From contig NC_043004.1 of NCBI RefSeq assembly GCF_006345805.1, positions 43,710,001-43,774,000 on the forward strand: a stretch of 64,000 bases of DNA. The letters are read 5' to 3'. Position numbers and translations under genes: made by a program. Within the stretch, counting starts at the first letter, position 1, and each line of letters opens with the position of its first letter. Below, piece after piece: positions 5,076-62,899 of this stretch. The notes under the pieces are model-generated. The model was not told where the DNA came from. It ran no database searches and saw only the letters and a program-made list of their open reading frames with translations. This DNA is from Octopus sinensis (Eukaryota).

Positions 5076-5398
5076 GACTGGCTCTGTGGTAAGTAGCATG
5101 CTTACTAACCACATAGTTGCCGGTTCAATTCCAATGCGTGTGTGTAGGTGTGTGTGTGTCTGTATGTGCATGTTTGTGTGTCTGTGTGTGTATGATTGTG
5201 TGTGTGTGTGTGTTTGTCCCCCCACGGTCGCTTAACACCCGATTTTGGTGTGTTTACGTCACCATAACTTAGCGGTTAGGCAAAAGAGAACGATAGAATA
5301 AGTATTAGTATTACAGTAAGTACTGGGGTATATTTGTTCGGCTAAATGCAGTCCTCCAGCATAGTCACAGCCAAATGACTGAACCGAATAAGAGAATA
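5076..5398 (+). mobile_element. tRNA-derived SINE (family A), degraded and internally deleted
   Basis: TGGCTCTGTGGTAAG...GGTTCAATTCC head, (TG)n middle, 3' half similar to 6811-7190. Confidence 0.75.
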
Positions 5399-6032: not shown

Positions 6033-6366
6033 ATCCTTAATCCTTTAATCCTTAAAAATGTTTCAGCCCGAAAGCTGTGGCCATGTTGGGGAACCACCGC
6101 CGAATGAGCTACACTAGTACGTAAATCCACCTCTGATATGTGGCACTTGGTCAACAAGGGAGTTCGATGCCGCTGCCCGCATCCGTGTCTCCTGCCGAGA
6201 GGTAGGTTCATCTGGGACCCCCAACAAGAAGAGATCCAGTTTAGTTTTAAAGAAATCCGCATCCACACCATGCAAGTCTCTCAGACAGTTAGGGAGGATG
6301 TTGAAGACCTGTGACCCTCTGAAACTCAAGCTGTTGCAGTATCTGGTCCTACATTTTGATGGTGAC
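6033..6366 (-). mobile_element. 5'-truncated CR1/L2-group LINE 3' end
   Basis: C-terminal ORF2 peptide RYCNSLSFRGSQVFNILPNCLRDLHGVDADFFKTKLDLFLLGVPDEP, then a 3' UTR stem-loop and short TTAAGGA-like tandem tail. Confidence 0.8.
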
Positions 6367-6810
6367 GTTTGAAAAAAAAAATTATACGAGTATAATTTAT
6401 AATATCGGCGTATTGAGGATAAGGGATATTTTTTTCTGAGAAAATTTTTGTGTAAGAGATGTATTTTACTGTTTCAGCATAGATTCATTACGAATTGTTT
6501 CGGTTTTAAAATACTAAGACGCAGAAACATACTTAATTCAATATTCTTGAATATACACACATGCATTTTATCGTAATATTAGATTTTATTTTAACGTTTT
6601 TGACGCTCACACTTTAAGCATAAGCATATATTCATTAACTCAGTCTGTTTAAGGATTTCAAACTTCTATGTAATTTTTGTCTCCTTTACCCTAATGACAT
6701 TTTTATTCATCATATTTCCCAAATATGAAATAGCTTTCATACATATCATTCTAGTTTTAAGTTTAAATCAAATAATTGTAGGAATTATTAATAGTTATCT
6801 CTTTTATTTC

Positions 6811-7190
6811 TCTTTTACTTGTTTCAGTCATTTGACTGTGGCCATGCTGGAGCACCGCCTTTAGTAGAGCAAATTCTTTGTAAGCCTAGTACCTATTCTA
6901 TCGGTGTCTTCTGCCGAACCACTAAGTTACAGGGACGTAAACACACCGGCATCGGTTGTCAAGCGATGTTGTTGGGGGGGGGCAAACACAGACACATAAA
7001 CAAACACACATATGCATATATATACGACGGGCTTCTTTCAGTTTCCGTCTACCAAATCCACTGACAAGGCTTTGGTCGCCGGGAGGCTATAGTAGAAGAC
7101 ACTTACCCAAGGTGCCACGCAGTAGAACTGAACCCGGAACCATGTGGCTGGTAAGCAAGCTACTTACCACACAGCCACTCCTACGCCTAT
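6811..7190 (-). mobile_element. tRNA-derived SINE (family A), full length
   Basis: A-box TGGCTGTGTGGTAAG, B-box GGTTCAGTTC, central body, LINE-like 3' tail GGCGGTGCTCCAGCATGGCCACAGTCAAATGACTGAAAC; near-identical copy at 62075-62474. Confidence 0.9.
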
Positions 7191-9430
7191 ATTATAAATA
7201 ATAATATAATATTATGTTAATAAATTAACATGTGTCAGTTTAAATTCTCCATTAATTTTATTAGACATATATATATATATATATATATATGCGTGTGTTT
7301 CTGTGTGTGTGTGTGTGTTTTCGCGCGCGCGTGTGTGTGTGTATGTGTGTGAATGTGACAAATTTCGTCCAGTACCAGTTGCATAGTTCTACAAACAAAC
7401 CTCTAAATGTACGATAGATACCCAGTAACCAATATTCTGGCCATATTATTTGACATATTATAAAAACCTATTTTTAGTAGTTTTGTCTATCGTCTTTTTT
7501 TTTGTGTTAAAACAAATTTGATGTGCACAGGTAATACTACACAATTGTCTGAAATACGTTGTGTTCAACCGATATAAAATTTGCATCCATTGCTTTACAC
7601 ATATATGGGAACGGCTTTGGGCAGTAATGTAATTTTTATGCTTGCATTTTTCGTGCCCATAATTTCATATAAGGCTACATATTGCATGTTATTAATAACA
7701 TGATATAGGGCACTTTTGAAAACGTAGAGATTAAAAATATCAATCTTTGTTACAAGAAATTACTCCAATGTAAACTGCAGAAGCCTTACCCCACGTAAAT
7801 CTCAATAACACATGAGTATCAAATATAGACTATATGTTACAGAAAACATGTGTGTGTGTGTGTGTCTGTCTGTCTGTCTGTCTGTTTGCGTGCGCCTGTA
7901 TATGGCTGTGTGTATGGATGTGTATGGACATGGATTTTATCTTCACCGCGTCAGAATCGGTACTTTTTCCAACCTGTCCCTGAAAACAATTAATTCCGCA
8001 AAATTGAATAAGCGATTGACACGTAATCATATCAGTATTGATGCAATGTTATCGACTAAACGCTTCGAGGTGGTTCCCTGACATGCTAGCAATCCAGTGA
8101 CAATTGAATTGATAACAGTATTAAATGTTTACAACCATTCGAAGCACCACCGTTATGGTTTCATGATAACATAGGCAATTTATACAAATATAATCATCTA
8201 GGAATGTTTCTATGCAAAGTTTAGGCTTCAATACTGTTCCTCATATACACAGAGGTACACGACAACATATCTGAAACTTTCATTGTTGGCGTTTGTTTCC
8301 TTCAGTTTCGTAAAGAAGATGTGATCGTTTTTTCTAGTTGTGAACGGTATGATATCGAATGCTATATAATGATATTTTAATCTATTTATGATTGATATAG
8401 TCTACATGTAAATGACGGACATTTTAGAAATGTTTATTTTAAAATTGCATTTTATCTCGAAGCACATAAGACTATAAATAGTAGTATTTAAATAATTGGG
8501 GTGAAAAGTCAATATTTATATGCAATTTTCTATCCCAAAAAAGGCTTGGCTTTCAAACCAATAATTATATGCTAATATGTATATCCACGTGGGCTTCAAG
8601 GGCCGTTGTTCTAGAATAGAAACGAAGTATTTCACATTCACCCGAGAGTTTATAAATTTTCTCATATTAATAGAATAACTCAGATTTGAAAATATATTTC
8701 AAACGCAACTAGAAATTGAAGAGGGATCCCCAACGGATAAAAATCAATCTCTTCACCCCGCATCTGGAGAGGATTCCTTTTTTTCATCACAAATTCAAAA
8801 ATTGCGGAAATGTAGACATTTTGTTTACAAGATGCTACATAACGCAGTTATGAGACCAATGATACAATGCTGAAATTATTAGTTTTCGTGTTATTATTTT
8901 AAATCATTATTTTACCAGGTCAGTTACTCTGATGCTAACTTAAATTTCGTTACCAGACATATTGTCATAATTTTCTTTTGCGAATTCAATAAAAACTCTC
9001 TAACGATTGGTATACTTCAATAATTTCTGGTTTCTTGCATTAAGAGTAGTAAAAAATAAATATATAAATAAATGACATGAAAATTGGAAATGTTTTCGTT
9101 ATCCTGCTAAAGTTTTTAGACATATATACTCCAATTAAAGCAATGTTTTAGTAAACCTTACGTCTAAGTGTAGACGCGCAATAAGTTTTTATGTCTCCTT
9201 TTTATTCTTCCCAATATATAGATTACAAGTAGTTTCATTTAAAACTCTGACAAACATTACCAAGGAGATTGTAGACAAAATGACATTTATTGTGTTTAGT
9301 TTGCTATGAAAGCCAAACCAGAAAACTGAACTGATCAATAAAAGCATTAATCTGTTCGAAATAAATAGAACGCGTAGATAATGATAATGTACATGATTAT
9401 GTTTCTCTTATGGTGTTGATGGTGATGATA

Positions 9431-28894: not shown

Positions 28895-29450
28895 TTTATA
28901 GGTGCTACACTTGAAGCTTTCCTGTCGACTGAAGATGCTTCTCTATAGCAGTGTGGGAGCATTTCATTTTATCTGCAAGTTCCCTTGTCGTTTGACGAGA
29001 ATAATCGCTCTTCATCGAACTCAACTGGACGGCCAGAACGAGGTGCGGCTTTGAGGTCAATATTACCATTTTTCAACGTGGAATGCCAATCACGAGCGGT
29101 TCTTTCAGCTATGGCACCCTCTCCATACACAACATAAATGTCACCAGTAGATTCTGCGGCCTTAGAATCTTGATTAAAATCAAAATGAAGGAGTTGTCGA
29201 AAATGCTCTTTTTTCTTAATTTAATGATTGATTGATTGATTCTAGTTTCAGCTTATGAGCTGTGGCCATGCTGGGGCATAATGATCTGAAATAAACAAAA
29301 AATAACTAAGATTATCTAGAAAAATAACAAAATAGATTCCAAAATGATTCAAAAATAGAATTGTCGAAAAAAAATATTTCCAAATTTAAAAAGGCAATAA
29401 ATTTCAAAATTTAAAAATAAACGGCGGTAACTTAGTTTGCCAACCCAATA
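28895..29450 (-). mobile_element. Mariner 5' fragment with TIR
   Basis: KKEHFRQLLHFDFNQDSKAAE...VYGEGAIAERTARDW...APRSGRPVEFDEE..RQTTRELADKM; TIR rc TATTGGGTTGGC near 29438-29450. Confidence 0.85.
29229..29278 (-). mobile_element. 50-bp retroposed LINE 3' tail with 7-bp TSD
   Basis: TGCCCCAGCATGGCCACAGCTCATAAGCTGAAAC plus (AATC)n; TAATGAT duplicated at 29222-28 and 29279-85. Confidence 0.75.
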
Positions 29451-30739
29451 TTTGAAATTGCAACGTTTGATGAGATGTTGTAGAACATTCATTACTTAGT
29501 TAAACAATTCTCATAAGAAAAAAAATATCTGCAGTATTGGAGGTCTTCTGTTGGTTTTTCATCAAAATGTTATCTGAGCACTGGACAATATCATACCCAC
29601 TTAGAAAACATCTAACGCTTTTGTATCATTATCACAACTACTACACTGCAAACACGAATACGAAGATAAACAGCATTTAGACCTATCATTGTTTTATTAC
29701 TACGATACATAACCTAAATCATTGGCCTCTAATATCATGTTCTCTCATAAATGGAGCAGCAAAAGAAAGAAAAAATCTTCTACAGAAACTTCTCAGACAT
29801 ATTATTTAAAAGTTATTGATGTTTATTATGTTACCCATACAAATTAAAATAGAAAGTTAATTTATACGGGTCCTCTCCAAAACGCCGTTTTATGTTCATT
29901 TCGGGATTTTTGGATACTAAATGAAGATATTTATGCCTTATTTAACTGAGGTGCATTGTGACTGGTTCCTAGAAAACTAATGCCAGTCGGGAATCATTAT
30001 ACATTACAATTTAGATTGAATAGAACACCTCGCATTATTTGTCCTGAGTCTCTCAGGTCTGAGTTCATATTCTCTCAGGTCAAAGTCTGAGTTCATAGCC
30101 TCTCAGGTCTGAGTTCAGTCGAGGTTAAATTTCCCTATCATCATTTCGTGTTGGATAAACAAATAGCAGTCTAAGGCAGTGCATTAGTGAAATGGTTAGC
30201 GCGTCTGTCATTACGAATAATAGCAGCTATTCTGAGTTCATAGAACCTGAAGAATTCGAATCTGACGCTGTCGCTTCTGATAAATTGTAACCATACCCTC
30301 GTAGTTACGAACCCCAAATATTATCAGCTAACTGGATAACTAATGTGTATCGCATCATTATTTCGATCGGAAGATAATGCTACACCACTGGTATGGTATA
30401 TTCTGATCTAATAGCATGCAAGCTGGGAAATATAGCACATCATAATACGATGCCTTAATTACTGTCTTCAAGGCTGTTATAATTTATGGATGAGTAACTT
30501 TCATCAGATTATCTCTTCATTACACGTTGTTGTTTCATTTCTGCCGTTTAATTTCGAGGTGTTATCTACCGAGTCTGCAGTTTACAATTCTTGACACCAC
30601 TTTTCTAAAATTATAAACTTAAAAAAAAAAAGCTTTAGTTTCGATTTTAGCTTTGAAATAAACAAAATTATTCGCATTTTTTTTTCTGATCTTGTCTTCA
30701 TATTTACTATGCATAATTTAGATACATATGATGAATTAG

Positions 30740-30883
30740 ATATATGCTATTTATAGATATATGCTAAAGTGATATTTACAGATACATGCTATTTATATAT
30801 ATATGCTAAAGTAATATTTATAGACGTATGCCATTTATATATATATGTGAAAGTGATATTTATAGATACTTTCTATTTATATA

Positions 30884-30943
<60 letters not shown>

Positions 30944-31200
30944 TTCAGCTCAGAGCTGCGACCATGCTCATGCACCGCCGTTAAAAAATACAATGTGTGA
31001 TGCTTACAGCACCTAGGGTTCCCAAGCGGTCACCCATCTAAGTACTAACTAGGCTCGACGTTGCTTAACTTCGATGATCGGACGAGAACCGGTGCCTTGA
31101 ACGTGATATGGCCGTAGGCTAAAGTAATATTTTACAGATATATGCTTAAGTGATATTTATTGATATATGCGTTTTATAGTTGTATGCTTTAGTGATATTA
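30740..31200. repeat. Degenerate roughly 40-bp AT-rich minisatellite interrupted by the 5S insertion
   Basis: Repeated TATGCTAAAGT(G/A)ATATTTA(C/T)AGA units on both sides of 30943-31119. Confidence 0.8.
31000..31119 (-). rRNA. 5S: Full-length dispersed 5S rRNA copy (likely retroposed pseudogene)
   Basis: GCCTACGGCCATATCACG...GTCCGATCATCGAAGTTAAGCAACGTCGAGCCTAGTTAGTACTTAGATGGGTGACCGCTTGGGAA...GGTGCTGTAAGCAT; boxes A and C recognisable, C3.A mismatch in helix I, T6 about 12 nt downstream. Confidence 0.95.
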
Positions 31201-32101
31201 TATCAATAAATAAATTTTTTAATTGTAGACATATATCTATCGAATTGCGCATTAGTATTGTACAGCTGTAGTAAATGGGATTCCTGAAATACCAAATTAC
31301 TTTTGAAGATAAATGCAATAGCTATTGCATTAAACAGATTACGTACTGATGTGGACAATCGTGCGTAATAGCGCAAGCTATGGCCGTTAAATCAGTGGAG
31401 AGAAGAGCCTTCCAAAGCAACAGACTGGATTAGAAATTCGAATTTGAAATTACTGAATGCGTGGAAGAAGGTAATATTTCAGTGAAATCTGTTGGGTAGT
31501 TCTCGGGTTTTAGCGATGCCCACATACACAAACACAGGCAGACAGACACTCATTATCAGTTTTATATATATAGACATAGTATATATACATATATACACAC
31601 ATGTATATACACGCTCTTGCATTTGATTTCTTTTATGCGTTACGATGCTCATATAATTTCTAGATGATATTAATTATATGTAGCATTACTTTATCGTTTC
31701 TGAGAAGGGGTGGTATAATTTAAACCGTTAATTGATTATCAAATAGATTGCGAAAAGGGACATATCACAAAAAATGTAGATACAATTAATTAGTTTAGCA
31801 GAAAAATATGATATGCTTTTCGTTTTGTTCATAAGATGTCAAAAGTGAGAGAAAGCGTTATATTTTAATATTATATACTAGGAAAGATACCCGAGGTTGC
31901 AAGGGATTAAAGTGGTATAGGTTCGTATTTTTTCGCTACTTTCGGTCATGTGACAGTGGATATGATAGGGTAGCGCATTCAGTCGAAGAAATCGAACCAA
32001 AGATTTATTCTTTGTAAGCCTATTACTTATTTTTTCAGAAAACACAGCATTATCGTTTGTGAAGCGAAGGTGGGAGTACAAACACAGATACACAAACATA
32101 G

Positions 32102-36370: not shown

Positions 36371-36653
36371 ATGCCACTTATCATTGATAATTATATATGA
36401 GTCGTTTTCCTCACAGACTCTAGAAGATGTTTAAGCACCATTTCGATAGTCTTAACCAAGTCGAAACATCTAACAATAATATGATGATTATTGTTTATTT
36501 TAGAATGGAGAGGAATTATAATCAGATCCGTGGTCTAGTTTGTTTAACAAAGCTTTTGAAACAATTTGCCACGCCATCATCAAGGACGCTTCTAATGTTA
36601 CCTCTAAACACTTCAATGACATTTGACCACATCTCTGTCTGTTTGTGTGTCTG

Positions 36654-36690
<37 letters not shown>

Positions 36691-36889
36691 ATCTCTCTCT
36701 GTATCTCTGTCTCTGTCTCTCTCTCTCTTATCGGTCGTGTTATTCTTTGCTCCGCAGTGAAAGATTGTTTTTGTGCTCAAAAGTTTGAAAATTTGCTGTT
36801 TTGGTCGTCGAGGCCACTTCTTTTCTGCTGTTGCAGCAGAGTTCTGCTGTTCTTTCCCCCTTGTTTCAAGGGGGAAGTGACGAAAAGAC

Positions 36890-38212
36890 ATGAATTTGCA
36901 ACCAGTCTCCTCCGAGTCGGAGGAAAACGTTGAAAATTTGTTTGAAGGCATGAAGGCGAAAATGCGGGAGGAGGAAGGTAGAAGTAAAGAGACGTCTCAC
37001 GCGAGCGTTACAAAAGCAGAAGACAATATGTCTGGCGAAGCTAGTAAACGACAAGAAAAAGCAAAAATAAATTTTGCGAGTGCAGCAACTCGCCCCTGTG
37101 AAAATATAGTCATCAACAAGGAAGAATTAAAGAAATACCAAGGACTACTAAAAAAAGAAGGTGATAATGTGAAGTTGTTCCCTCCCAGTGAATTGATTTA
37201 CGCGACGGAGAGAAAAACTGTCATATATAAGACGTATAATGTAAAAAATAAGAAAATTGACTTCGTACATAGAGAAGCCATTGAAAAATGTTTGAGGCCG
37301 ATATGGCAACAAACTACATTTATAACAAGGGGTAGTCGCTTCGGCACGGTAGAGGTGCGTTTCCCTAGCGAAGAAATAGCTAGGGAACATTCAACAAGAA
37401 CGTTGAAGTCAGAAGAGGTAGTTCTTTTACCATTTTATTTAGGAATGAGAACTAGCAGAATAACGGTTACGGACATTCCGCCCGAAGTAGATGTGGATTT
37501 CATAACAGCAGCGATTCTCTTAGGCAAAGAGGAAGAAATTGCCATTCTTCAGTCTAAAAGATATCGCCCCACAACCTGGTATGGACAGGACTTAGAGCTT
37601 GTGATCCAAGCGAACCCCTCGGACTTGGAAAAATTGCCAAGCTCCCTCACCATTGGAGATAATACCACCTTGATGGTAATAGTCGAGGGAAGAAAACCGA
37701 GGTGCTATAAATGTGGCGAGAAAGGCCACATAAGTTCGAGCTGCAAGAAGACAGCGAAAGAAAATACTACAGAGGCAAGCACGACGCCGAAAACAACTTC
37801 ACCGCTAGAAATAGCAGCCACGTCGCGCACCCCAATTGCCGAAATTCAGCCGACAACGGGAGAAAACAACGATGACAACAACAACAACAACATCCAGGAG
37901 TGGGTCAACGTGGAAGCTTCAAAAAGAAGACGGAAACGGAAAAATCCACCCTCTTCGGATACACAGGACTATACTCTGACACAGACAAGCACACCCACAC
38001 CCACAAATACAGTCGCAAACACACACGTAGCCAAAAAAACACACATACTGGAAAAAGCACACACAATCACTCACACACCTACCACAAGCACGCACACACT
38101 TACAAACACCCACGCTTCTACAAGCACACACACACCCACAAACACACACACACAGCCCCCTCCACAATCACCTAACAAAAAAAAAAAGAAACACATTCAC
38201 GGCGATAAATAA
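36890..38212 (+). CDS. LINE ORF1 nucleic-acid-binding protein (Tx1/L1 type, one CCHC zinc knuckle)
   Basis: 440-aa ATG ORF; CYKCGEKGHISSSC at 37703-37744 preceded by an RRM-like region; Thr-rich tail. The original ORF may have extended to about 38498. Confidence 0.85.
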   Translation: MNLQPVSSESEENVENLFEGMKAKMREEEGRSKETSHASVTKAEDNMSGEASKRQEKAKINFASAATRPCENIVINKEELKKYQGLLKKEGDNVKLFPPSELIYATERKTVIYKTYNVKNKKIDFVHREAIEKCLRPIWQQTTFITRGSRFGTVEVRFPSEEIAREHSTRTLKSEEVVLLPFYLGMRTSRITVTDIPPEVDVDFITAAILLGKEEEIAILQSKRYRPTTWYGQDLELVIQANPSDLEKLPSSLTIGDNTTLMVIVEGRKPRCYKCGEKGHISSSCKKTAKENTTEASTTPKTTSPLEIAATSRTPIAEIQPTTGENNDDNNNNNIQEWVNVEASKRRRKRKNPPSSDTQDYTLTQTSTPTPTNTVANTHVAKKTHILEKAHTITHTPTTSTHTLTNTHASTSTHTPTNTHTQPPPQSPNKKKKKHIHGDK

Positions 38213-38499
38213 AAACAATAACCTATTAAGGGAAAAAATTAATTTACTGAAATCGGCGAAAAAATATATCGCAACAGATATAAATAGTATTATATCTGAA
38301 AATGTAGAATTTTATACAATAGATAACGCGGATTATTTTGAAATTAAAAAATATTTTGCGGAGGACGTAGGCCCGTTACAGATGAACTTTTCAAGCCATC
38401 TGTACAAGCAATTCGCAAAAAAACTGACCTCGCAAAACACAACACTCACAGACAGAAAAGTTTTAAACATTCGACTAAATTTTCACTTTCTCGTTTAAA

Positions 38500-41400
38500 C
38501 TCGGTTGTATAAATACTCGCGGCCTGGGGTCGTATTGGAAGCAAGGCTACCTCCTTAACGACCTTAGGTCGCATCGTTTGGATGTAGTGGTAATTACCGA
38601 ATCCAGACTGAGTGGACTGCAGGCTTTTTCGCCCCGTCTAAACGGCTACGAGAAATACATTTCTCCCTGTCGACCTGGAGGGGGAGGAGGAGTGGCAGTG
38701 CTGGTCAGAAAAAACCTGGATTTAGAGATTAGAACTGTCTTTATAGATCCGGAAGGCAGGTTGATCGTTTTGGATGTGACGCACAGCAGTGGTAAAGTGT
38801 TCAGGCTGGTCGCTGTCTATGCTCCCTGCGAAGGAAAAGCCGGGCAGAAAGAGTATTTCAAAAGCCTAGAGAATTTTGTTGGCACGTCGAACACGTTAGT
38901 ATTGCTAGGTGACTTCAACATAATTTGTGATGCAAGCGTAGATTATGTTGGCTCAAGAAAGAATACGAGGGGATTACCTCACCTCAACGATATGCTAAGT
39001 CGTTTCGAATTGGCAGATAGATTCAGACTGGACCATCCAGACACTCCAGCGTGGACCTGGGCAAGAAACGACGGGTCGTCCAGATCTTATATCGATAGAA
39101 TCATAACTAGAAGAAAAGATAAGAAAATACTTAGCTGTCCACAACACCATATCGTCAGCTACAGCGATCACAAATTAGTGACCTGTACGCTCGACATAGA
39201 TAGCATGTGTAGACGAGGTACCGGCTACTGGAAGCTAAACAACTCACTATTGGACTGTGAAGCCTACAGGAATCGGATTAAACAATTAGTAATGAGGGCG
39301 TTAACCGGATCCATTATCAACAATAAATGGTGGTACGCCCTGAAAAGAGCCATCAAATTTGAGTCAATTAGGTTTAGCGAAGAACTAGCTAGTGCTAGAA
39401 ACAAAGTAGAAAAGGAACTAGTTAAGGCAATAGAGGAGGCAATGAGGTCAGGCAGTGCATCGAAAGTGTTAGCGGCGAGGTTAGCACTAGACCAACATCT
39501 CAAAGCTAAACATGAAGGGTGCATTGTCAGGGCTAAGATCCGTGCAATGAGACAGGAAGGGATCAACGCAGCCGGATGGGCCCGGGTGGTAGAGGGCCAG
39601 CGTGGCAACAACTCAACCATTCGATCCTTGACGGGCCCAAATGGTCGATTAGTAAACGAACCCGAGGAGATGTGCAAGGTGTTTCATGATCATTTCGCCC
39701 AGCTATTCGGGAGGAGCGGCGGGCTGGAGCGCGGGGAGAAGCTCGCAGACTTCCTAGTCGGTTCTCCGCGTCTATCGAGGCCGGACGCGGAATCTTGTGA
39801 GGCGCCGATCACAGCCAAAGAAGTCGAGGATATGTTGGCAGACTGCGGCGGGGACAAATCGTCGGGACTCGACGGTTTGCCTTACGAACTCTATAGTAGC
39901 ATGCCAGACTTGTTTGGGCACCTACTTGCATGCGTGTACACCAACTGGCAGCAGAACGGGAGAATTCCTAAGTCTGTGAGCCGAGGGGTGGTAGCGCTGT
40001 TAAGAAAGGACCCAAACAAGGGGGATTTAATTGATAATTTCCGGCCTATCACTCTGCTTAACGCAGAGTTGAAGATCTTGGCCAAGGTCTTAGCAAAAAG
40101 GTTGGCGAGGGTCGTGGGCGAACTTGTTGGCGAGGCGCAAACTTGCGCCATCCCTGGAAGGACCATCCACGACAATCTCCACTTTCTACGCTATGCCTTA
40201 GAAAGGGTAAATAGGATTCCTGGCAAGGGTGGGGCTATAGTCCACTTGGACCAATCGAAAGCGTTTGATAGGGTGGACCATCAGTATCTGGAGGCGGTCC
40301 TCGCGGCGGCTGGCCTCGGCCCGACCTTCCGCGGATGGATCATCGTTTTATACAGCAACATCGAATCGGTAGTTCGGGTAAATGGTTTCCATTCGGAACC
40401 GTTCAGCATTGAACGTTCGGTACGTCAAGGGTGTCCTCTCTCCCCGCTTCTCTACGTTTTGGCCCTCGAGCCGTTGCTGAGGGGGTTGGAAACTATGAGA
40501 GGCACCCCGCAAGATCTAGGGTGCGGAAAGTCAGCTTCGGCGTATGCGGACGACATCACCGTCATCGTTTCCCGAGTCGAGCACCTACAGTGGGTGGGTG
40601 AGGCCTTAAGGGACTACGAAGCGGTGGCAGGAGCGAAAGTCAACCGGGATAAATCGGTCGGCTTGCAACTCGGCACCTGGAGGGGCAAGTCGATGTCTTC
40701 CGACAGCGTCGTAGGACGTTGGACGGAAGGACCGGTGAAAATGCTTGGGATCTGGTTAGGTCCAGATCTCCAGATAGAGAAGTACTGGAGCGAGGTGGCG
40801 AGAAAGGTGGCTCTCCTAACTCAGACATGGTCTGAGCGGAAACTGTCCTTGAAAGGGAGGGCTGAGGTTGCAGAAGTGTTTATCGCCTCTGTAATCACTT
40901 ACCGCCTAACCGTAGTGCCTTGCTCCGATTCGTGGCTGAACAAACTGGAACGCATGCTCTTTCGCTTTTTGTGGAGGGGCAGCAGACCTCTTGTAAGGCG
41001 CTCTATTTGCTGCCAAAAGCCGCTGAACGGTGTTAGGGATGCCGTGGCTAAAAATGCGCAGACATGCGCTCAGGCTTAGGCACCTCTGGATTTACCTGGA
41101 CGGTGAGCAGGTGTGGTCTCCGTTTGTCAAGCTGTTATTTCTACAGTTCACATCGTTTAACGAACTGAACCCATGGATCAAGTGTAGACCGAGGTTGGGC
41201 ATGTGGCATGCAGAGTGCTATCAGGCACTCGTGCTTCTCTCCCAGTCGGGCAACGCCGGTGGCGGGGCTACTACCGCTTTCTTCTATAGAGGGTTAGTAG
41301 AGTTTAAGTGTGACGACGTACTAGGAGAAACTCTGGGCTTCGACGAAAATCAACTGGCCAGCCTGTTCCAAAGAACATTCGGTCCGGGGCCTATGGATAA

Positions 41401-41893
41401 TTAACAAAAGTCCCTGGCCTGGCAATGTTACAGAGGAGCTTTACCGGTTCGAGATAAGCTCTTTAGACATGGGTGTGCACCTTCGCCGGTTTGTGCAAGA
41501 TGTAAGAGGGACAGTGGAACTGTCCTGCACGCGATTGTGCAATGCCCCAAGGTGACTGAACTCTGGACTTATGTCGAACACCTGCTGTCGCATTCGAGAA
41601 GAGTACAACTGTCGAGCGAATCTGTAATTAAGATAGTTCCGCCGACCTTCCTGAATAGGGAGGAGCGAGCCTGTTTTCTTTCGGTAGTTGCTATGGCGAA
41701 AGAAGTAGTGTGGAAGACGAGAGTAAAAGGAATTGCAACAGGCATGTTTATCTCCAGTCTCGAGCTAATCGACTTTTTCGTTTTCCACATGAAACGGAAA
41801 ATAAGGCTGGAGAAGAAATGCCTGTCGCAAAGTGTGTTTCGTAAAAGATGGAAGTCTATAGCAAGTATGTTGCGATTGAAAGAACCTGTTTAA
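38500..41893 (+). pseudogene. LINE ORF2 (APE endonuclease, RT, C-terminal CCHC), one frameshift and one nonsense codon
   Basis: GCINTRGL, ITES, LGDFN, TW..YIDRI..SDH (APE); KSSGLDGL, FRPITLLN, DQSKAFDRV, RQGCPLSP, YADD (RT); frameshift near 41030, in-frame TAA at 41402, CARC..TVLHAIVQC; no ATG at the natural start. Confidence 0.9.
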
Positions 41894-42344
41894 TCGAGAT
41901 TGTAAAAAAGGATAAAGCAAGTCTTCAGTGTGAGTATGTGGTTTGTGGGGTCGACCGCGTCCTCCGCTTCATTTTTTGTTAATCACTCATTCTCATTTAA
42001 TTGTATATATTTTGTTTGTTTATTCATATGTTTCGTCTCATTCGATACCCTGACCCCAACGTTTGTTTTGTCCCCTCTTTTTCTCAACCTTATGGTGAAT
42101 AAAGAAATACTCTCTCTCTCTCTCTCTTTCTCTCTCCTAACCACAGAAGACTTTGTTAATGATGCTAGAGTTTATGAGAAGAATGCATCCGAAATTTCTA
42201 ATCTGCGCTAATAAGGGAAAAGCATATACTTTTAGTTTAAACTGTAGCAGATGAAATATTACAAGCTGAATATGCATAAATATATATTTACACTGACACA
42301 CACTCATAAATTTATACACATCCATGCAAGTGTACATAGTATAC

Positions 42345-61980: not shown

Positions 61981-62074
61981 TATATATATATATGCATATA
62001 TATATGCACACACGCACACATATATAAGTATGTATGTGTGCGTTTGTATATATATATATATATATATACATTCT

Positions 62075-62474
62075 CTCTTTTACTTGTTTCAGTCATTTGA
62101 CTGCGGACATGCTGGAGCACCGCCTTTAATCGAGCAACTCGACCCCAGGACTTATTCTTTTTGTAAGCCCAGTACTTATTCTATCGGTCTCTTTTGCCGA
62201 ACCTCTAAGTAACGGGGACATAAACACACCAGCATCGGTTGTCAAGCAATGCCAGGGGGACAAACACAGACACACAAACACACACACGCGTATATATATA
62301 CATATATACGACGGGCTTCTTTCAGTTTCCGTCTACCAAATCCACTCACAAGGCGTTGGTCGGCCCGAGGCTATAGTAGAAGACACTTGCCCAAGGTGCT
62401 ACGCAGTGTGACTGAACCCGGAACCATGTGGCTGGTAAACAGGCTACTTACCACACAGCCACTACTGCGCCTAT
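62075..62474 (-). mobile_element. tRNA-derived SINE (family A), full length
   Basis: Near-identical to 6811-7190. Confidence 0.9.
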
Positions 62475-62899
62475 ATATATATATATATTATAGTATTATA
62501 TAAATAATACTACAACTACTACTATTATGACAGCACAGGAATCTGAGAACCAACTATCACCCTCACCATTATCCCTACCCCTGCTACTGTTGCTGTTGCT
62601 GCAACCACTGCTGCTAACACACATAAACCAATAATATCAGTGATATCAATGATGATAATAATAATAACAGTGGAACGAAACGGGCGGAGCCTCCCCATAC
62701 GTTATTTTATGACACATCTAGTGATGGAGTCACAATAAAAACGCTGATAATTGCGCAACCTGATAATCGCTACCTCATATGAGTGACAATGAAAAAACAA
62801 AATAATGGTGGTAATGAAACAAAAGCCAATGATGGTAACAGTGTTACACCCGGTAGGCTCAGATATTCCGATCCGGATCCAGCCTCTCGATATCCAGAA

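What the first reader, a model, noticed from the sequence alone, without database searches (positions are those of the whole stretch)
30943..31119. Full-length 5S rRNA fused to a LINE-recognition tail: SINE3-like chimera
Seen (minus strand): 120-nt 5S, then a short trailer CACACATTGTA, T6, AA, then CGGCGGTGCATGAGCATGGTCGCAGCTCTGAGCTGAAA. This last segment matches the 3' tail of the CR1-type LINE at 6061-6101, the family A SINE tails and the 50-bp insert at 29229. The whole unit interrupts a minisatellite at a (TA)n|GCTAAAGT junction. Established: 5S-headed SINE3 elements borrow CR1/L2 tails, and U6-L1-type chimeric retrocopies arise by template switch or RNA ligation. Inference: this is either a one-off chimeric retrocopy of a pre-5S transcript (T6 lies before the tail, so Pol III would normally stop there) or a member of an undescribed cephalopod SINE3 family.
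Basis: partly seen in the sequence, partly recalled or inferred. Interest (0 to 1): 0.75.

Follow-up and report, generated by a model that had tools for sequence, protein, structure and literature searches.

The report
5S rRNA copy fused to LINE tail
A full-length 5S ribosomal RNA copy joined to the 3' recognition hairpins of a CR1-like retrotransposon was pasted in one event into an AT-rich minisatellite; it is most likely a one-off by-product of retrotransposition, an aborted "proto-SINE", not a proven new mobile-element family.

Summary
Rfam finds one full-length 5S rRNA at 31001-31119(-), scoring 101 bits. It is followed by a 20-nt linker (TCACACATTGTA-T6-AA) and a 38-nt segment at 30943-30980. 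That segment has no close copy in the window. It does carry the two-hairpin 3' module found on a CR1-like LINE fragment (6.1 kb), a tail-only LINE insert (29.2 kb), three tRNA-headed SINE copies and a LINE 3' UTR from another assembly. The resemblance is beyond chance, and hairpin 2 shows compensatory changes. Deleting 30890-31118 (5S, linker, tail and a (TA)~26 run) restores an intact minisatellite unit exactly. The 229-bp block therefore went in as one retroposition event, without a TSD. One-off chimera versus SINE3-type family could not be settled, because no genome of this species was reachable and every outside search was empty. Internal evidence leans to a one-off template-switch chimera. 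The head is a complete, near-intact 5S (32 of 34 pairs). A T6 Pol III terminator lies between head and tail, whereas the true SINE copies here almost lack T4+ runs. Only one copy lies in 64 kb. The finding is a known kind of event seen with a tail-specific LINE in a probable cephalopod, of moderate interest.

The parts
31001..31119 (-). Full-length 5S rRNA-derived head (119 nt by the Rfam alignment). The first G (31119) is shared ambiguously with the flank ACTTTAG.
   Evidence: Rfam RF00001, 101.1 bits, model 1-120. 32 of 34 model base pairs are standard; the broken ones are C3.A116 and C21.C57. It is the only 5S in 64 kb.
30981..31000 (-). 20-nt linker TCACACATTGTA-TTTTTT-AA. It is either a pre-5S 3' trailer ending at a Pol III terminator or the last codons plus TAA stop of the partner LINE. 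It contains the T6 that would stop Pol III before the tail.
   Evidence: Sequence read. The TAA-N-GGCGG spacing is shared with L001, where TAA is the ORF2 stop, and with the SINE tails.
30943..30980 (-). LINE-type 3' recognition module: hairpin 1 (CGGC.GUGC-AUGA-GCAU.GUCG), hairpin 2 (CAGCU-CUG-AGCUG) and AAA.
   Evidence: Fold energy -16.8 kcal/mol, z -2.3. The architecture is shared with 5 other tails, with compensatory changes in hairpin 2. Similarity is beyond chance. There is no close copy in the window.
30890..30942 (-). (TA)~26 terminal microsatellite belonging to the insert.
   Evidence: Deleting 30890-31118 restores ACTTTAG|CATATATATATAAATAG, identical to the intact unit boundary at 30812. 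Other module-bearing copies each end in their own microsatellite: (TA)n at 62.0 kb, (AATC)n at 29.2 kb and ATTAAGG-like at 6.05 kb.
30737..30889 (.). Target: AT-rich minisatellite (42-bp unit) on the 3' side of the insert in the element's sense.
   Evidence: TRF: period 42, 3.6 copies, 83% matches. Unit boundaries are listed.
31120..31170 (.). Target: minisatellite units on the 5' side of the insert (25-bp variant unit).
   Evidence: TRF and unit boundaries.
6061..6345 (-). 5'-truncated CR1/L2-like LINE 3' end. The ORF2 C-terminus (...FNILPNCLRDL...FKTKLDLFLLG...) ends at a stop 11 nt before the same two-hairpin module. It is comparison material, not part of the insert.
   Evidence: ORF and translation; sequence; fold.
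29229..29278 (-). Tail-only (5'-truncated) insertion of the same module type with an (AATC)n microsatellite, flanked by a 7-bp TSD (TAATGAT at 29222-29228 and 29279-29285, + strand). It shows that this LINE clade is or was active here and truncates severely.
   Evidence: Sequence and motif.
62040..62480 (-). A ~400-bp SINE with a tRNA-like head carrying the same tail module and ending in (TA)n. Further copies lie at 6809-7192(-) and 5079-5395(+).
   Evidence: blastn self-comparison: 84% over 408 nt and 76% over 205 nt. Tail parse. No T4+ runs in the two better copies.

Best explanation
This is a chimeric retrocopy made in a single target-primed reverse transcription event by a CR1/L2-like, tail-recognising LINE. 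The reverse transcriptase started on the 3' end of a LINE RNA, or of a SINE RNA carrying that LINE's tail. The evidence for this is the terminal (TA)n microsatellite, the two-hairpin 3' UTR module and probably the stop-codon region. After about 40-60 nt it switched template onto a complete 5S Pol III transcript and copied it to its 5' end. The cDNA was joined into an AT-rich minisatellite at ACTTTAG^CATATAT, with no target-site duplication and 1-2 nt of microhomology. The product has SINE architecture, a 5S head with internal promoter followed by a LINE tail. A T6 Pol III terminator sits between head and tail, so transcripts of this copy should lack the tail. It is therefore most likely a dead-on-arrival 'proto-SINE' and a single or very low-copy event, not a member of an amplified SINE3-type family. 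Shown here: the anatomy, the single-event insertion, the conserved tail structure and the T6. Inferred: template switching as the joining mechanism, and the single-copy status.
For: (1) The head is a full-length 5S in sense orientation. 32 of 34 pairs are intact, as expected for a copy of a real 5S transcript. (2) The 38-nt tail keeps every pair of a two-hairpin module. The same module forms essentially the whole 3' UTR of CR1-like LINEs: the ORF2 stop lies 11 nt upstream at 6.1 kb and 1 nt upstream in L001. Hairpin 2 covaries across copies: CAGCT/AGCTG, CAGTC/GACTG, CAGCCC/GGGCTG. The similarity is beyond chance. (3) Deleting 30890-31118 recreates an intact minisatellite unit exactly, so 5S, linker, tail and (TA)n arrived together. 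(4) The same LINE clade left a 50-bp tail-only insert with a 7-bp TSD and a 285-bp fragment in this window. This shows activity and very early termination or switching by its RT. (5) A T6 lies exactly between head and tail. The genuine Pol III SINE copies here have 0, 0 and 1 T4+ runs in 400, 384 and 317 nt, against a background of 8.5 per kb. (6) Only one copy lies in 64 kb, and none in 48 kb of related DNA. (7) The pattern 'full-length small Pol III RNA, sense, 5' of a LINE 3' end' is the described U6/L1 chimera pattern, attributed to template switching or RNA ligation. Template switching onto 5S is also the proposed origin of 5S-headed SINEs.
Against: Copy number in the genome was not testable. 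A single window cannot tell a unique chimera from a low- or medium-copy family. The T6 could have arisen in this copy by one T/C transition, or Pol III could read through it. There is no TSD, although the neighbouring tail-only insert of the same clade has one. The exact partner LINE, one with a near-identical 38-58-nt 3' end, was not found, so 'the tail is the end of an active LINE' is shown at the module level only. The tail begins within a few nt of the 5' base of the recognition module, which could hint at selection for a minimal functional tail, as in a SINE. Human 5S/L1 chimeras are mostly antisense and truncated, so the 5S precedent is imperfect.
Confidence: 0.55

Rival explanations
1. 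The unit is a member of an undescribed cephalopod 5S-derived SINE family (SINE3-type, simple head-plus-tail design). It would be transcribed by Pol III from the 5S internal promoter and mobilised by the CR1-like LINE through the two-hairpin tail. This copy would have acquired its T6 by mutation, or Pol III would read through it.
For: The architecture is what defines such SINEs: a 5S head, a complete LINE recognition module and a terminal microsatellite. The canonical T-run right after the 5S 3' end is absent, since the sequence reads ...AAGCATCACAC, and loss of that terminator is what a 5S-SINE master needs. The same LINE clade demonstrably serves an abundant SINE in this window. The tail starts close to the module's 5' edge and is structurally perfect. 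One copy in a random 64 kb would be common for a family and rare for a unique event.
Against: A T6 between head and tail would end Pol III transcripts before the tail, and bona fide SINE copies here avoid T4+ runs. The head is almost unaltered 5S, at 101 bits and 32 of 34 pairs. Described SINE3 heads are conserved mainly in the promoter boxes and diverge elsewhere. There is no second copy or fragment in the window. The literature I could search lists 5S-SINEs only from fish, mammals, reptiles and insects, despite several octopus repeat surveys. This is negative evidence only.
Confidence: 0.3
2. Two separate events, or a DNA-level fusion at a source locus. Either a 5S retropseudogene or orphon gene came to lie next to an independent tail-only LINE insertion, or a tail-only insert landed just downstream of a 5S gene elsewhere and a read-through transcript was then retroposed here.
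For: Tail-only insertions of about 50 bp exist in this very window.
Against: The tail has no TSD of its own. The outer boundaries of 5S...(TA)n coincide exactly with one breakpoint in a minisatellite unit. Two independent insertions would need the second to hit the precise 3' edge of the first. The source-locus version needs Pol III to read through a T6.
Confidence: 0.08
3. It is a functional or variant 5S rRNA gene, and the downstream sequence is simply its normal spacer.
For: The 5S scores high and keeps 32 of 34 pairs. A T-run lies 12 nt after the 3' end and could be a terminator. A Drosophila-type pre-5S with a ~15-nt trailer is a precedent, recalled from memory.
Against: It is a single 5S with no tandem array in 64 kb. 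It sits as a clean insert inside a minisatellite. Two helix pairs are broken. The 'spacer' is a LINE recognition module followed by a LINE-type microsatellite.
Confidence: 0.04

Closest known systems
U6/L1 (and other small-RNA/L1) chimeric retrocopies of mammals (Buzdin 2002; Garcia-Perez 2007; survey in bioRxiv 10.1101/2025.02.02.635956)
   Same: A full-length Pol III small RNA lies in sense orientation, immediately 5' of a severely 5'-truncated LINE 3' end. It is inserted in one event. Each is a one-off product of template switching (or RNA ligation), not a propagating family.
   Different: The LINE here is a stringent, tail-recognising CR1/L2-like element with a two-hairpin 3' UTR and a microsatellite end, not poly(A)-dependent L1. 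The RNA is 5S, and in human L1 chimeras 5S is mostly antisense and truncated. There is no TSD here. The host is a probable cephalopod.
SINE3 / 5S rRNA-derived SINEs (zebrafish SINE3, Kapitonov & Jurka 2003; HaSE3 and other insect SINE3, PMC3272025, PMC10886601; MEG and Ped-1 in mammals)
   Same: A 5S-derived head with the type 1 internal promoter region is joined to a 3' end borrowed from a partner LINE. The proposed origin is template switching from a LINE or SINE RNA onto 5S rRNA.
   Different: Those are families with many copies, usually have a body region, have heads diverged outside the promoter boxes, and have no terminator before the tail. Here there is one known copy, no body, a near-native head and an internal T6.
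UnaL2/UnaSINE1 and other stringent LINE-SINE pairs sharing a 3' stem-loop (Kajikawa & Okada 2002; the L2/CR1 tails of bivalve SINEs with compensatory changes, PMC4824008)
   Same: A conserved 3' stem-loop followed by short terminal repeats is shared between LINE and SINEs, with compensatory substitutions that keep the stem.
   Different: The module here is two adjacent hairpins plus AAA. Recognition by the LINE RT is inferred here and was not tested.
AmnSINE1 / 5S-Deu-L2 type SINEs (Nishihara 2006)
   Same: A 5S sequence was added at the 5' end of a LINE-tailed retroposon by template switching.
   Different: Those carry a tRNA-derived part and a Deu core domain, and they are amplified families. 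None of that is present here.

Membership tests
SINE3 (5S rRNA-derived SINE), by the SINEBase definition (PMC3531059) | 5' head with at least 60% identity to 5S rRNA over at least 60 nt | tested here: met
   Rfam 5S_rRNA, 101 bits, full model 1-120.
SINE3 (5S rRNA-derived SINE), by the SINEBase definition (PMC3531059) | Extra non-5S sequence (body or LINE-derived 3' region) that distinguishes it from a plain RNA pseudogene | tested here: met
   A 20-nt linker plus a 38-nt two-hairpin LINE module plus (TA)n.
SINE3 (5S rRNA-derived SINE), by the SINEBase definition (PMC3531059) | [quoted passage not shown] | not testable with these tools
   No genome of this species is in any collection. There is one copy in the 64-kb window and none in 48 kb of related loci. 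The protein-ORF search and the metagenome and genome pattern scans were empty.
SINE3 (5S rRNA-derived SINE), by the SINEBase definition (PMC3531059) | Pol III can transcribe from the head through to the LINE-recognition tail, with no internal terminator | tested here: not met
   A T6 lies at 30983-30988 between head and tail. The tRNA-headed SINE copies in the window have 0, 0 and 1 T4+ runs, against a background of 8.5 per kb. This is sequence-level only; transcription was not assayed.
SINE3 (5S rRNA-derived SINE), by the SINEBase definition (PMC3531059) | Diagnostic substitutions shared with a SINE source gene and not with the cellular 5S rRNA | not testable with these tools
   No reference 5S of this species or of a cephalopod could be obtained. 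I refrained from comparing with a sequence recalled from memory.
LINE-mediated chimeric small-RNA retrocopy (U6/L1 type) | The small RNA is full-length, in sense orientation, directly 5' of the 3' end of a LINE | tested here: met
LINE-mediated chimeric small-RNA retrocopy (U6/L1 type) | Both parts arrived in one insertion event | tested here: met
   The empty site is restored exactly by deleting 30890-31118. This rests on minisatellite periodicity, not on an orthologous empty site.
LINE-mediated chimeric small-RNA retrocopy (U6/L1 type) | Target-site duplication flanking the whole chimera | tested here: not met
   No TSD beyond 0-1 nt. A tail-only insert of the same clade has a 7-bp TSD. Insertions without a TSD, or with target truncation, are known for non-LTR elements.
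LINE-mediated chimeric small-RNA retrocopy (U6/L1 type) | The 3' part is identical or near-identical to the end of a LINE family active in the same genome | tested here: inconclusive
   The module is shared with CR1-like LINE ends at 6.1 kb and in L001, but the best identity is about 70-85%. The exact partner was not found.
Functional 5S rDNA unit | Tandem array of 5S genes with a common spacer; all helices intact | tested here: not met
   A single 5S in 64 kb; 2 of 34 pairs broken; embedded as an insert in a minisatellite.

The most novel reading that the evidence does not exclude
[quoted passage not shown] It would be a minimal 'head + 20-nt linker + two-hairpin tail' SINE3 mobilised by a CR1-like LINE. 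As far as the literature I could search shows, it would be the first SINE3 reported from Mollusca. The T6 would be a private mutation of this copy or would be read through by Pol III.
Probability: 0.28. Interest if true: 0.5.

Novelty: new member of a known kind. Interest (0 to 1): 0.35.

Why it matters
SINEs are thought to be born when a LINE reverse transcriptase jumps from its own 3' end onto a Pol III transcript, but the raw products of that jump are rarely seen outside mammalian L1. This locus is a clean, datable-looking example for a stringent, tail-recognising CR1/L2-like LINE in a probable cephalopod. It carries a complete 5S, the complete recognition module and the terminal microsatellite, and its empty site can be reconstructed exactly. 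It also shows why most such products go nowhere: a terminator lies between promoter and tail. If a genome-wide search instead finds a family, that would extend 5S-derived SINEs to molluscs. Either way, it is a modest addition to known TE biology and not a new principle.

Tried and rejected
(1) I searched the 5.8-billion-protein collection with the antisense-frame translation across tail, linker and 5S, hoping for spurious ORF calls of sister copies. No candidate was found. The unit has stops in all six frames.

(2) I tried to sample same-species DNA through LINE proteins. The CR1-like C-terminus gave a single hit, P0001/L001, on a 746-bp contig of GCA_024449705.1. The ORF2 of the intact LINE gave a best hit at 65% identity on a 3-kb contig and Argonauta hians at 51%. 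The window's own ORF2 is not on record. The loci fetched, 48 kb in all, held no 5S, and outside L001 itself (fetched for its LINE 3' end) no module.

(3) Exact-pattern scans found nothing. Metagenome contigs were scanned with the tail-specific and the 5S/linker junction patterns, and GTDB genome contigs with the generic module.

(4) I tried to obtain a reference cephalopod 5S rRNA. Walker & Doolittle 1983 is not held, and a sequence-string search of papers found nothing. I first read several G-to-A and C-to-T differences as CpG decay relative to a 'canonical mollusc 5S' recalled from memory. I dropped that argument because CUUAG...CUUGGGAAC is the normal form in some protostomes, and 32 of 34 pairs are intact.

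(5) I considered the argument that the tail starts exactly at the module boundary and was therefore selected. I weakened it after seeing that TAA-N-GGCGG is shared with L001's stop codon, so the LINE-derived part may extend into or through the linker.

(6) I rejected the reading that (TA)35 is an expansion of the minisatellite's own TA run. The unit's own CATATATATATAAATAG is intact after it.

(7) The mir-297, mir-3149 and similar hits of the permissive Rfam scan are TA/CA microsatellite artefacts, all far below the gathering scores.

Full report
OBSERVATION

On the minus strand the window reads, 5' to 3', as follows. First comes minisatellite sequence ending ...AAAATATTACTTTA. Then comes a 5S rRNA sequence, GCCTACGG...GCTGTAAGCA (31119-31001). 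Next are TCACACATTGTA, T6 and AA (31000-30981). Next is CGGCGGTGCATGAGCATGGTCGCAGCTCTGAGCTGAAA (30980-30943). Then a TA run. Then minisatellite again.

Rfam places a complete 5S_rRNA at 31001-31119(-), with 101.1 bits against a gathering score of 38 and model positions 1-120. It is the only 5S in the window, even in a permissive scan. The other low-scoring hits of that scan are TA/CA microsatellite artefacts. ARAGORN finds no tRNA genes. Parsing the Rfam alignment shows 32 of 34 model pairs are standard; only C3.A116 and C21.C57 are broken.

THE TAIL

The 38-nt segment has no close copy in the window: with up to 3 mismatches it finds only itself, and blastn-short likewise. It does belong to a recognisable class. 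Local alignment and a motif scan find the pattern GGCGGTG-N5-9-CATGGYCRCAG-hairpin-CTGAAA at five places:
- 6061-6102(-);
- 29246-29276(-);
- 6.85 kb(-);
- 62.1 kb(-);
- in degenerate form, 5.3 kb(+).

The resemblance is beyond chance. Local scores were 36, 36, 36, 34 and 32, against a mean of 25.9 and a maximum of 31 for 100 shuffles of the tail. Five tiles scored at least 30, against 0.06 expected.

All versions fold into two adjacent hairpins followed by AAA. A hand-registered parse gives these results:
- Hairpin 1 is conserved (GGC/GYC outer stem, GUGC/GCAU inner stem).
- Hairpin 2 varies by compensatory changes: CAGCT/AGCTG in the 5S tail and the 29.2-kb insert, CAGTC/GACTG in the SINE copies, CAGCT/GGCTG at 6.1 kb, and CAGCCC/GGGCTG in an outside locus.
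- The 5S tail keeps every pair.

WHAT CARRIES THIS MODULE

At 6.1 kb the module closes a 5'-truncated LINE. The upstream frame reads ...SFRGSQVFNILPNCLRDLHGVDADFFKTKLDLFLLGVPDEP...GGFTY*, a CR1/L2-type ORF2 C-terminus by my knowledge of the FN.LP...FK..L motif. Its stop lies 11 nt before the module.

The only database relative of that peptide is P0001, 68% identical, from the 746-bp contig L001 of assembly GCA_024449705.1. It shows the same design: ORF2 stop TAA, one base, then GGCGGTGCCCCAGCATGGCCACAG-hairpin-CTGAAAC. The module is therefore essentially the whole 3' UTR of a LINE clade.

At 29229-29278 sits a 50-bp tail-only insert with an (AATC)n end and a clean 7-bp TSD, TAATGAT on the + strand.

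At 62040-62480(-), 6809-7192(-) and 5079-5395(+) lie three copies of a ~400-bp SINE with a tRNA-like head. It ends in the same module plus CAAGTAAAAGAG, and one copy is followed by (TA)n.

So this LINE clade has been active here, truncates severely, and serves SINEs. The intact LINE at 36.9-41.1 kb (zf-CCHC ORF1, APE+RT ORF2) has a different 3' end and is not the partner.

ONE INSERTION EVENT

Intact minisatellite units read ...AAATAT(T/C)ACTTTAG|CATATATATATAAATAG... on the sense (minus) strand, for example at 30812. At the 5S locus, ACTTTAG is followed by the 5S. After the tail and a 53-nt TA run, the sequence resumes with exactly CATATATATATAAATAG.

Deleting 30890-31118 recreates the unit boundary perfectly (a cruder version is). 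Three things follow:
- The 5S, linker, tail and (TA)~26 form one 229-bp insert.
- The TA run is the insert's own terminal microsatellite, like the microsatellites ending the other module-bearing copies. It is not an expansion of the host repeat.
- There is no TSD (0-1 nt), with a G or GC ambiguity at the 5' junction.

The tail has no TSD of its own.

THE LINKER

That remains possible.

There is a second reading. The sequence reads ...ACA CAT TGT ATT TTT TAA-C-GGCGG. The spacing TAA-N-GGCGG is the same as at the ORF2 stop of L001 and in the SINE tails. The LINE-derived part may therefore begin inside the T6AA, or may even include the whole linker as the partner LINE's last codons. In that case the head would be a mature 5S rRNA. 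I could not decide between these readings without the partner LINE or the 5S rDNA flank.

FAMILY OR ONE-OFF

This is the crux, and it needs copy number in the genome, which I could not obtain. Every attempt failed or fell short:
- The protein collection holds almost nothing from this species. The junction-ORF search found no candidate.
- The window's own ORF2 is not on record.
- The best LINE relatives are 65% identical (on a 3-kb contig) and 51% identical (Argonauta hians).
- The 48 kb of loci fetched contain no 5S, and apart from L001 itself, which was fetched for its LINE 3' end, no further copy of the module.
- Exact-pattern scans of the metagenome and GTDB genome collections found nothing.

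Internal evidence leans towards a one-off:
- A T6 lies exactly between promoter-bearing head and tail. The three genuine Pol III SINE copies have 0, 0 and 1 runs of T4+ in 400, 384 and 317 nt, against a window background of 8.5 per kb per strand. This copy should therefore not transcribe its own tail.
- The head is a complete, nearly native 5S. Described SINE3 heads are conserved mainly in boxes A, IE and C and diverge elsewhere.
- There is no other copy or fragment in 64 kb.
- 'Full-length Pol III RNA, sense, 5' of a truncated LINE end' is the described U6/L1 chimera pattern.

Some points count the other way:
- The architecture is exactly that of a simple SINE.
- The usual terminator directly after the 5S 3' end is absent.
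- The tail is complete and structurally perfect.
- A single transition could have created the T6.
- Finding one copy in a random 64 kb is more likely for a family.

I put the one-off chimera at about 0.55 and family membership at about 0.3.

MECHANISM (INFERRED)

The CR1-like LINE's endonuclease and RT primed on the (UA)n/module end of a LINE or LINE-tailed RNA at an AT-rich target. It copied about 40-60 nt, switched to the 3' end of a 5S transcript and copied it to +1. The 5' end was then joined with 1-2 nt of microhomology. RNA ligation before reverse transcription is an alternative way of joining the two RNAs. The sequence cannot tell these apart.

COMPARISON AND NOVELTY

The closest known cases fall into four groups:
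- U6/L1-type chimeric retrocopies. These show the same logic but with a different LINE type. Human 5S/L1 chimeras are mostly antisense and truncated.
- SINE3 families, including HaSE3. These share the architecture but are families with bodies and no internal terminator.
- Stringent LINE/SINE pairs that share a 3' stem-loop with compensatory changes.
- AmnSINE1-type elements, with a 5S added by template switching.

Reviews list 5S-derived SINEs from fish, mammals, reptiles and insects only. A cephalopod family would therefore be a taxonomic first, but that is unproven here.

The host assignment to an octopod cephalopod rests on two things. The other is that the best named LINE relative comes from Argonauta hians. 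I did not verify the species.

VERDICT

The feature is a new example of a known kind of event and is of moderate interest (0.35). A single BLAST against the source genome would settle the remaining question.

Noticed in passing
window 36427-41900 (+): A nearly full-length non-LTR retrotransposon. ORF1 is 440 aa with a CCHC zinc knuckle (36890-38212). ORF2 is 833 aa with APE endonuclease and RT (38578-41079). Coding-looking sequence continues to about 41.9 kb (a Cys/His-rich, zf-RVT-like end), so ORF2 appears interrupted at 41079. Its 3' end lacks the two-hairpin module. The best relatives are 65% identical (GCA_024449705.1) and 51% identical (Argonauta hians).
   Followed up: partly
window 62040-62480 (-), 6809-7192 (-), 5079-5395 (+): Three copies (84% and 76% identical to the first) of a ~400-bp SINE. 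It has a tRNA-like head (GGCGCAGTAGTGGCTGTGTGGTAAG...GGTTCCGGGTTCAGTC), an internal (GT)n-rich stretch and the LINE two-hairpin tail plus CAAGTAAAAGAG. ARAGORN does not call the head as a tRNA.
   Followed up: partly
window 29222-29285: A 50-bp tail-only LINE insertion (hairpin 1 truncated, hairpin 2 intact, (AATC)3 end) flanked by a perfect 7-bp TSD, TAATGAT. It is a very clean example of extreme 5' truncation by this LINE clade.
   Followed up: yes
window 6061-6345 (-) and L001 440-600: In this CR1-like LINE clade the ORF2 stop lies 1-11 nt before the two-hairpin module, so the functional 3' UTR is only about 40-55 nt. Each genomic copy ends in a different microsatellite: ATTAAGG-like, AATC, TA, or AAAAGAAT-like.
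   Followed up: partly
window 30737-30889 and 31120-31260: An AT-rich minisatellite with 42-bp units (variant 25-bp units on the other side) of the form CATATATATATAAATAGCATGTATCTGTAAATATCACTTTAG. It serves as the insertion target. Its own origin is unknown.
   Followed up: no
window-wide (e.g. 27.1, 32.1-33.0, 42.3-44.1, 49.8-50.3, 61.9-62.1 kb): Very dense TA/CA/GT microsatellites produce dozens of sub-threshold Rfam 'mir-297/mir-3149/mir-1277/mir-466' hits. All are far below the gathering scores and are low-complexity artefacts.
   Followed up: yes
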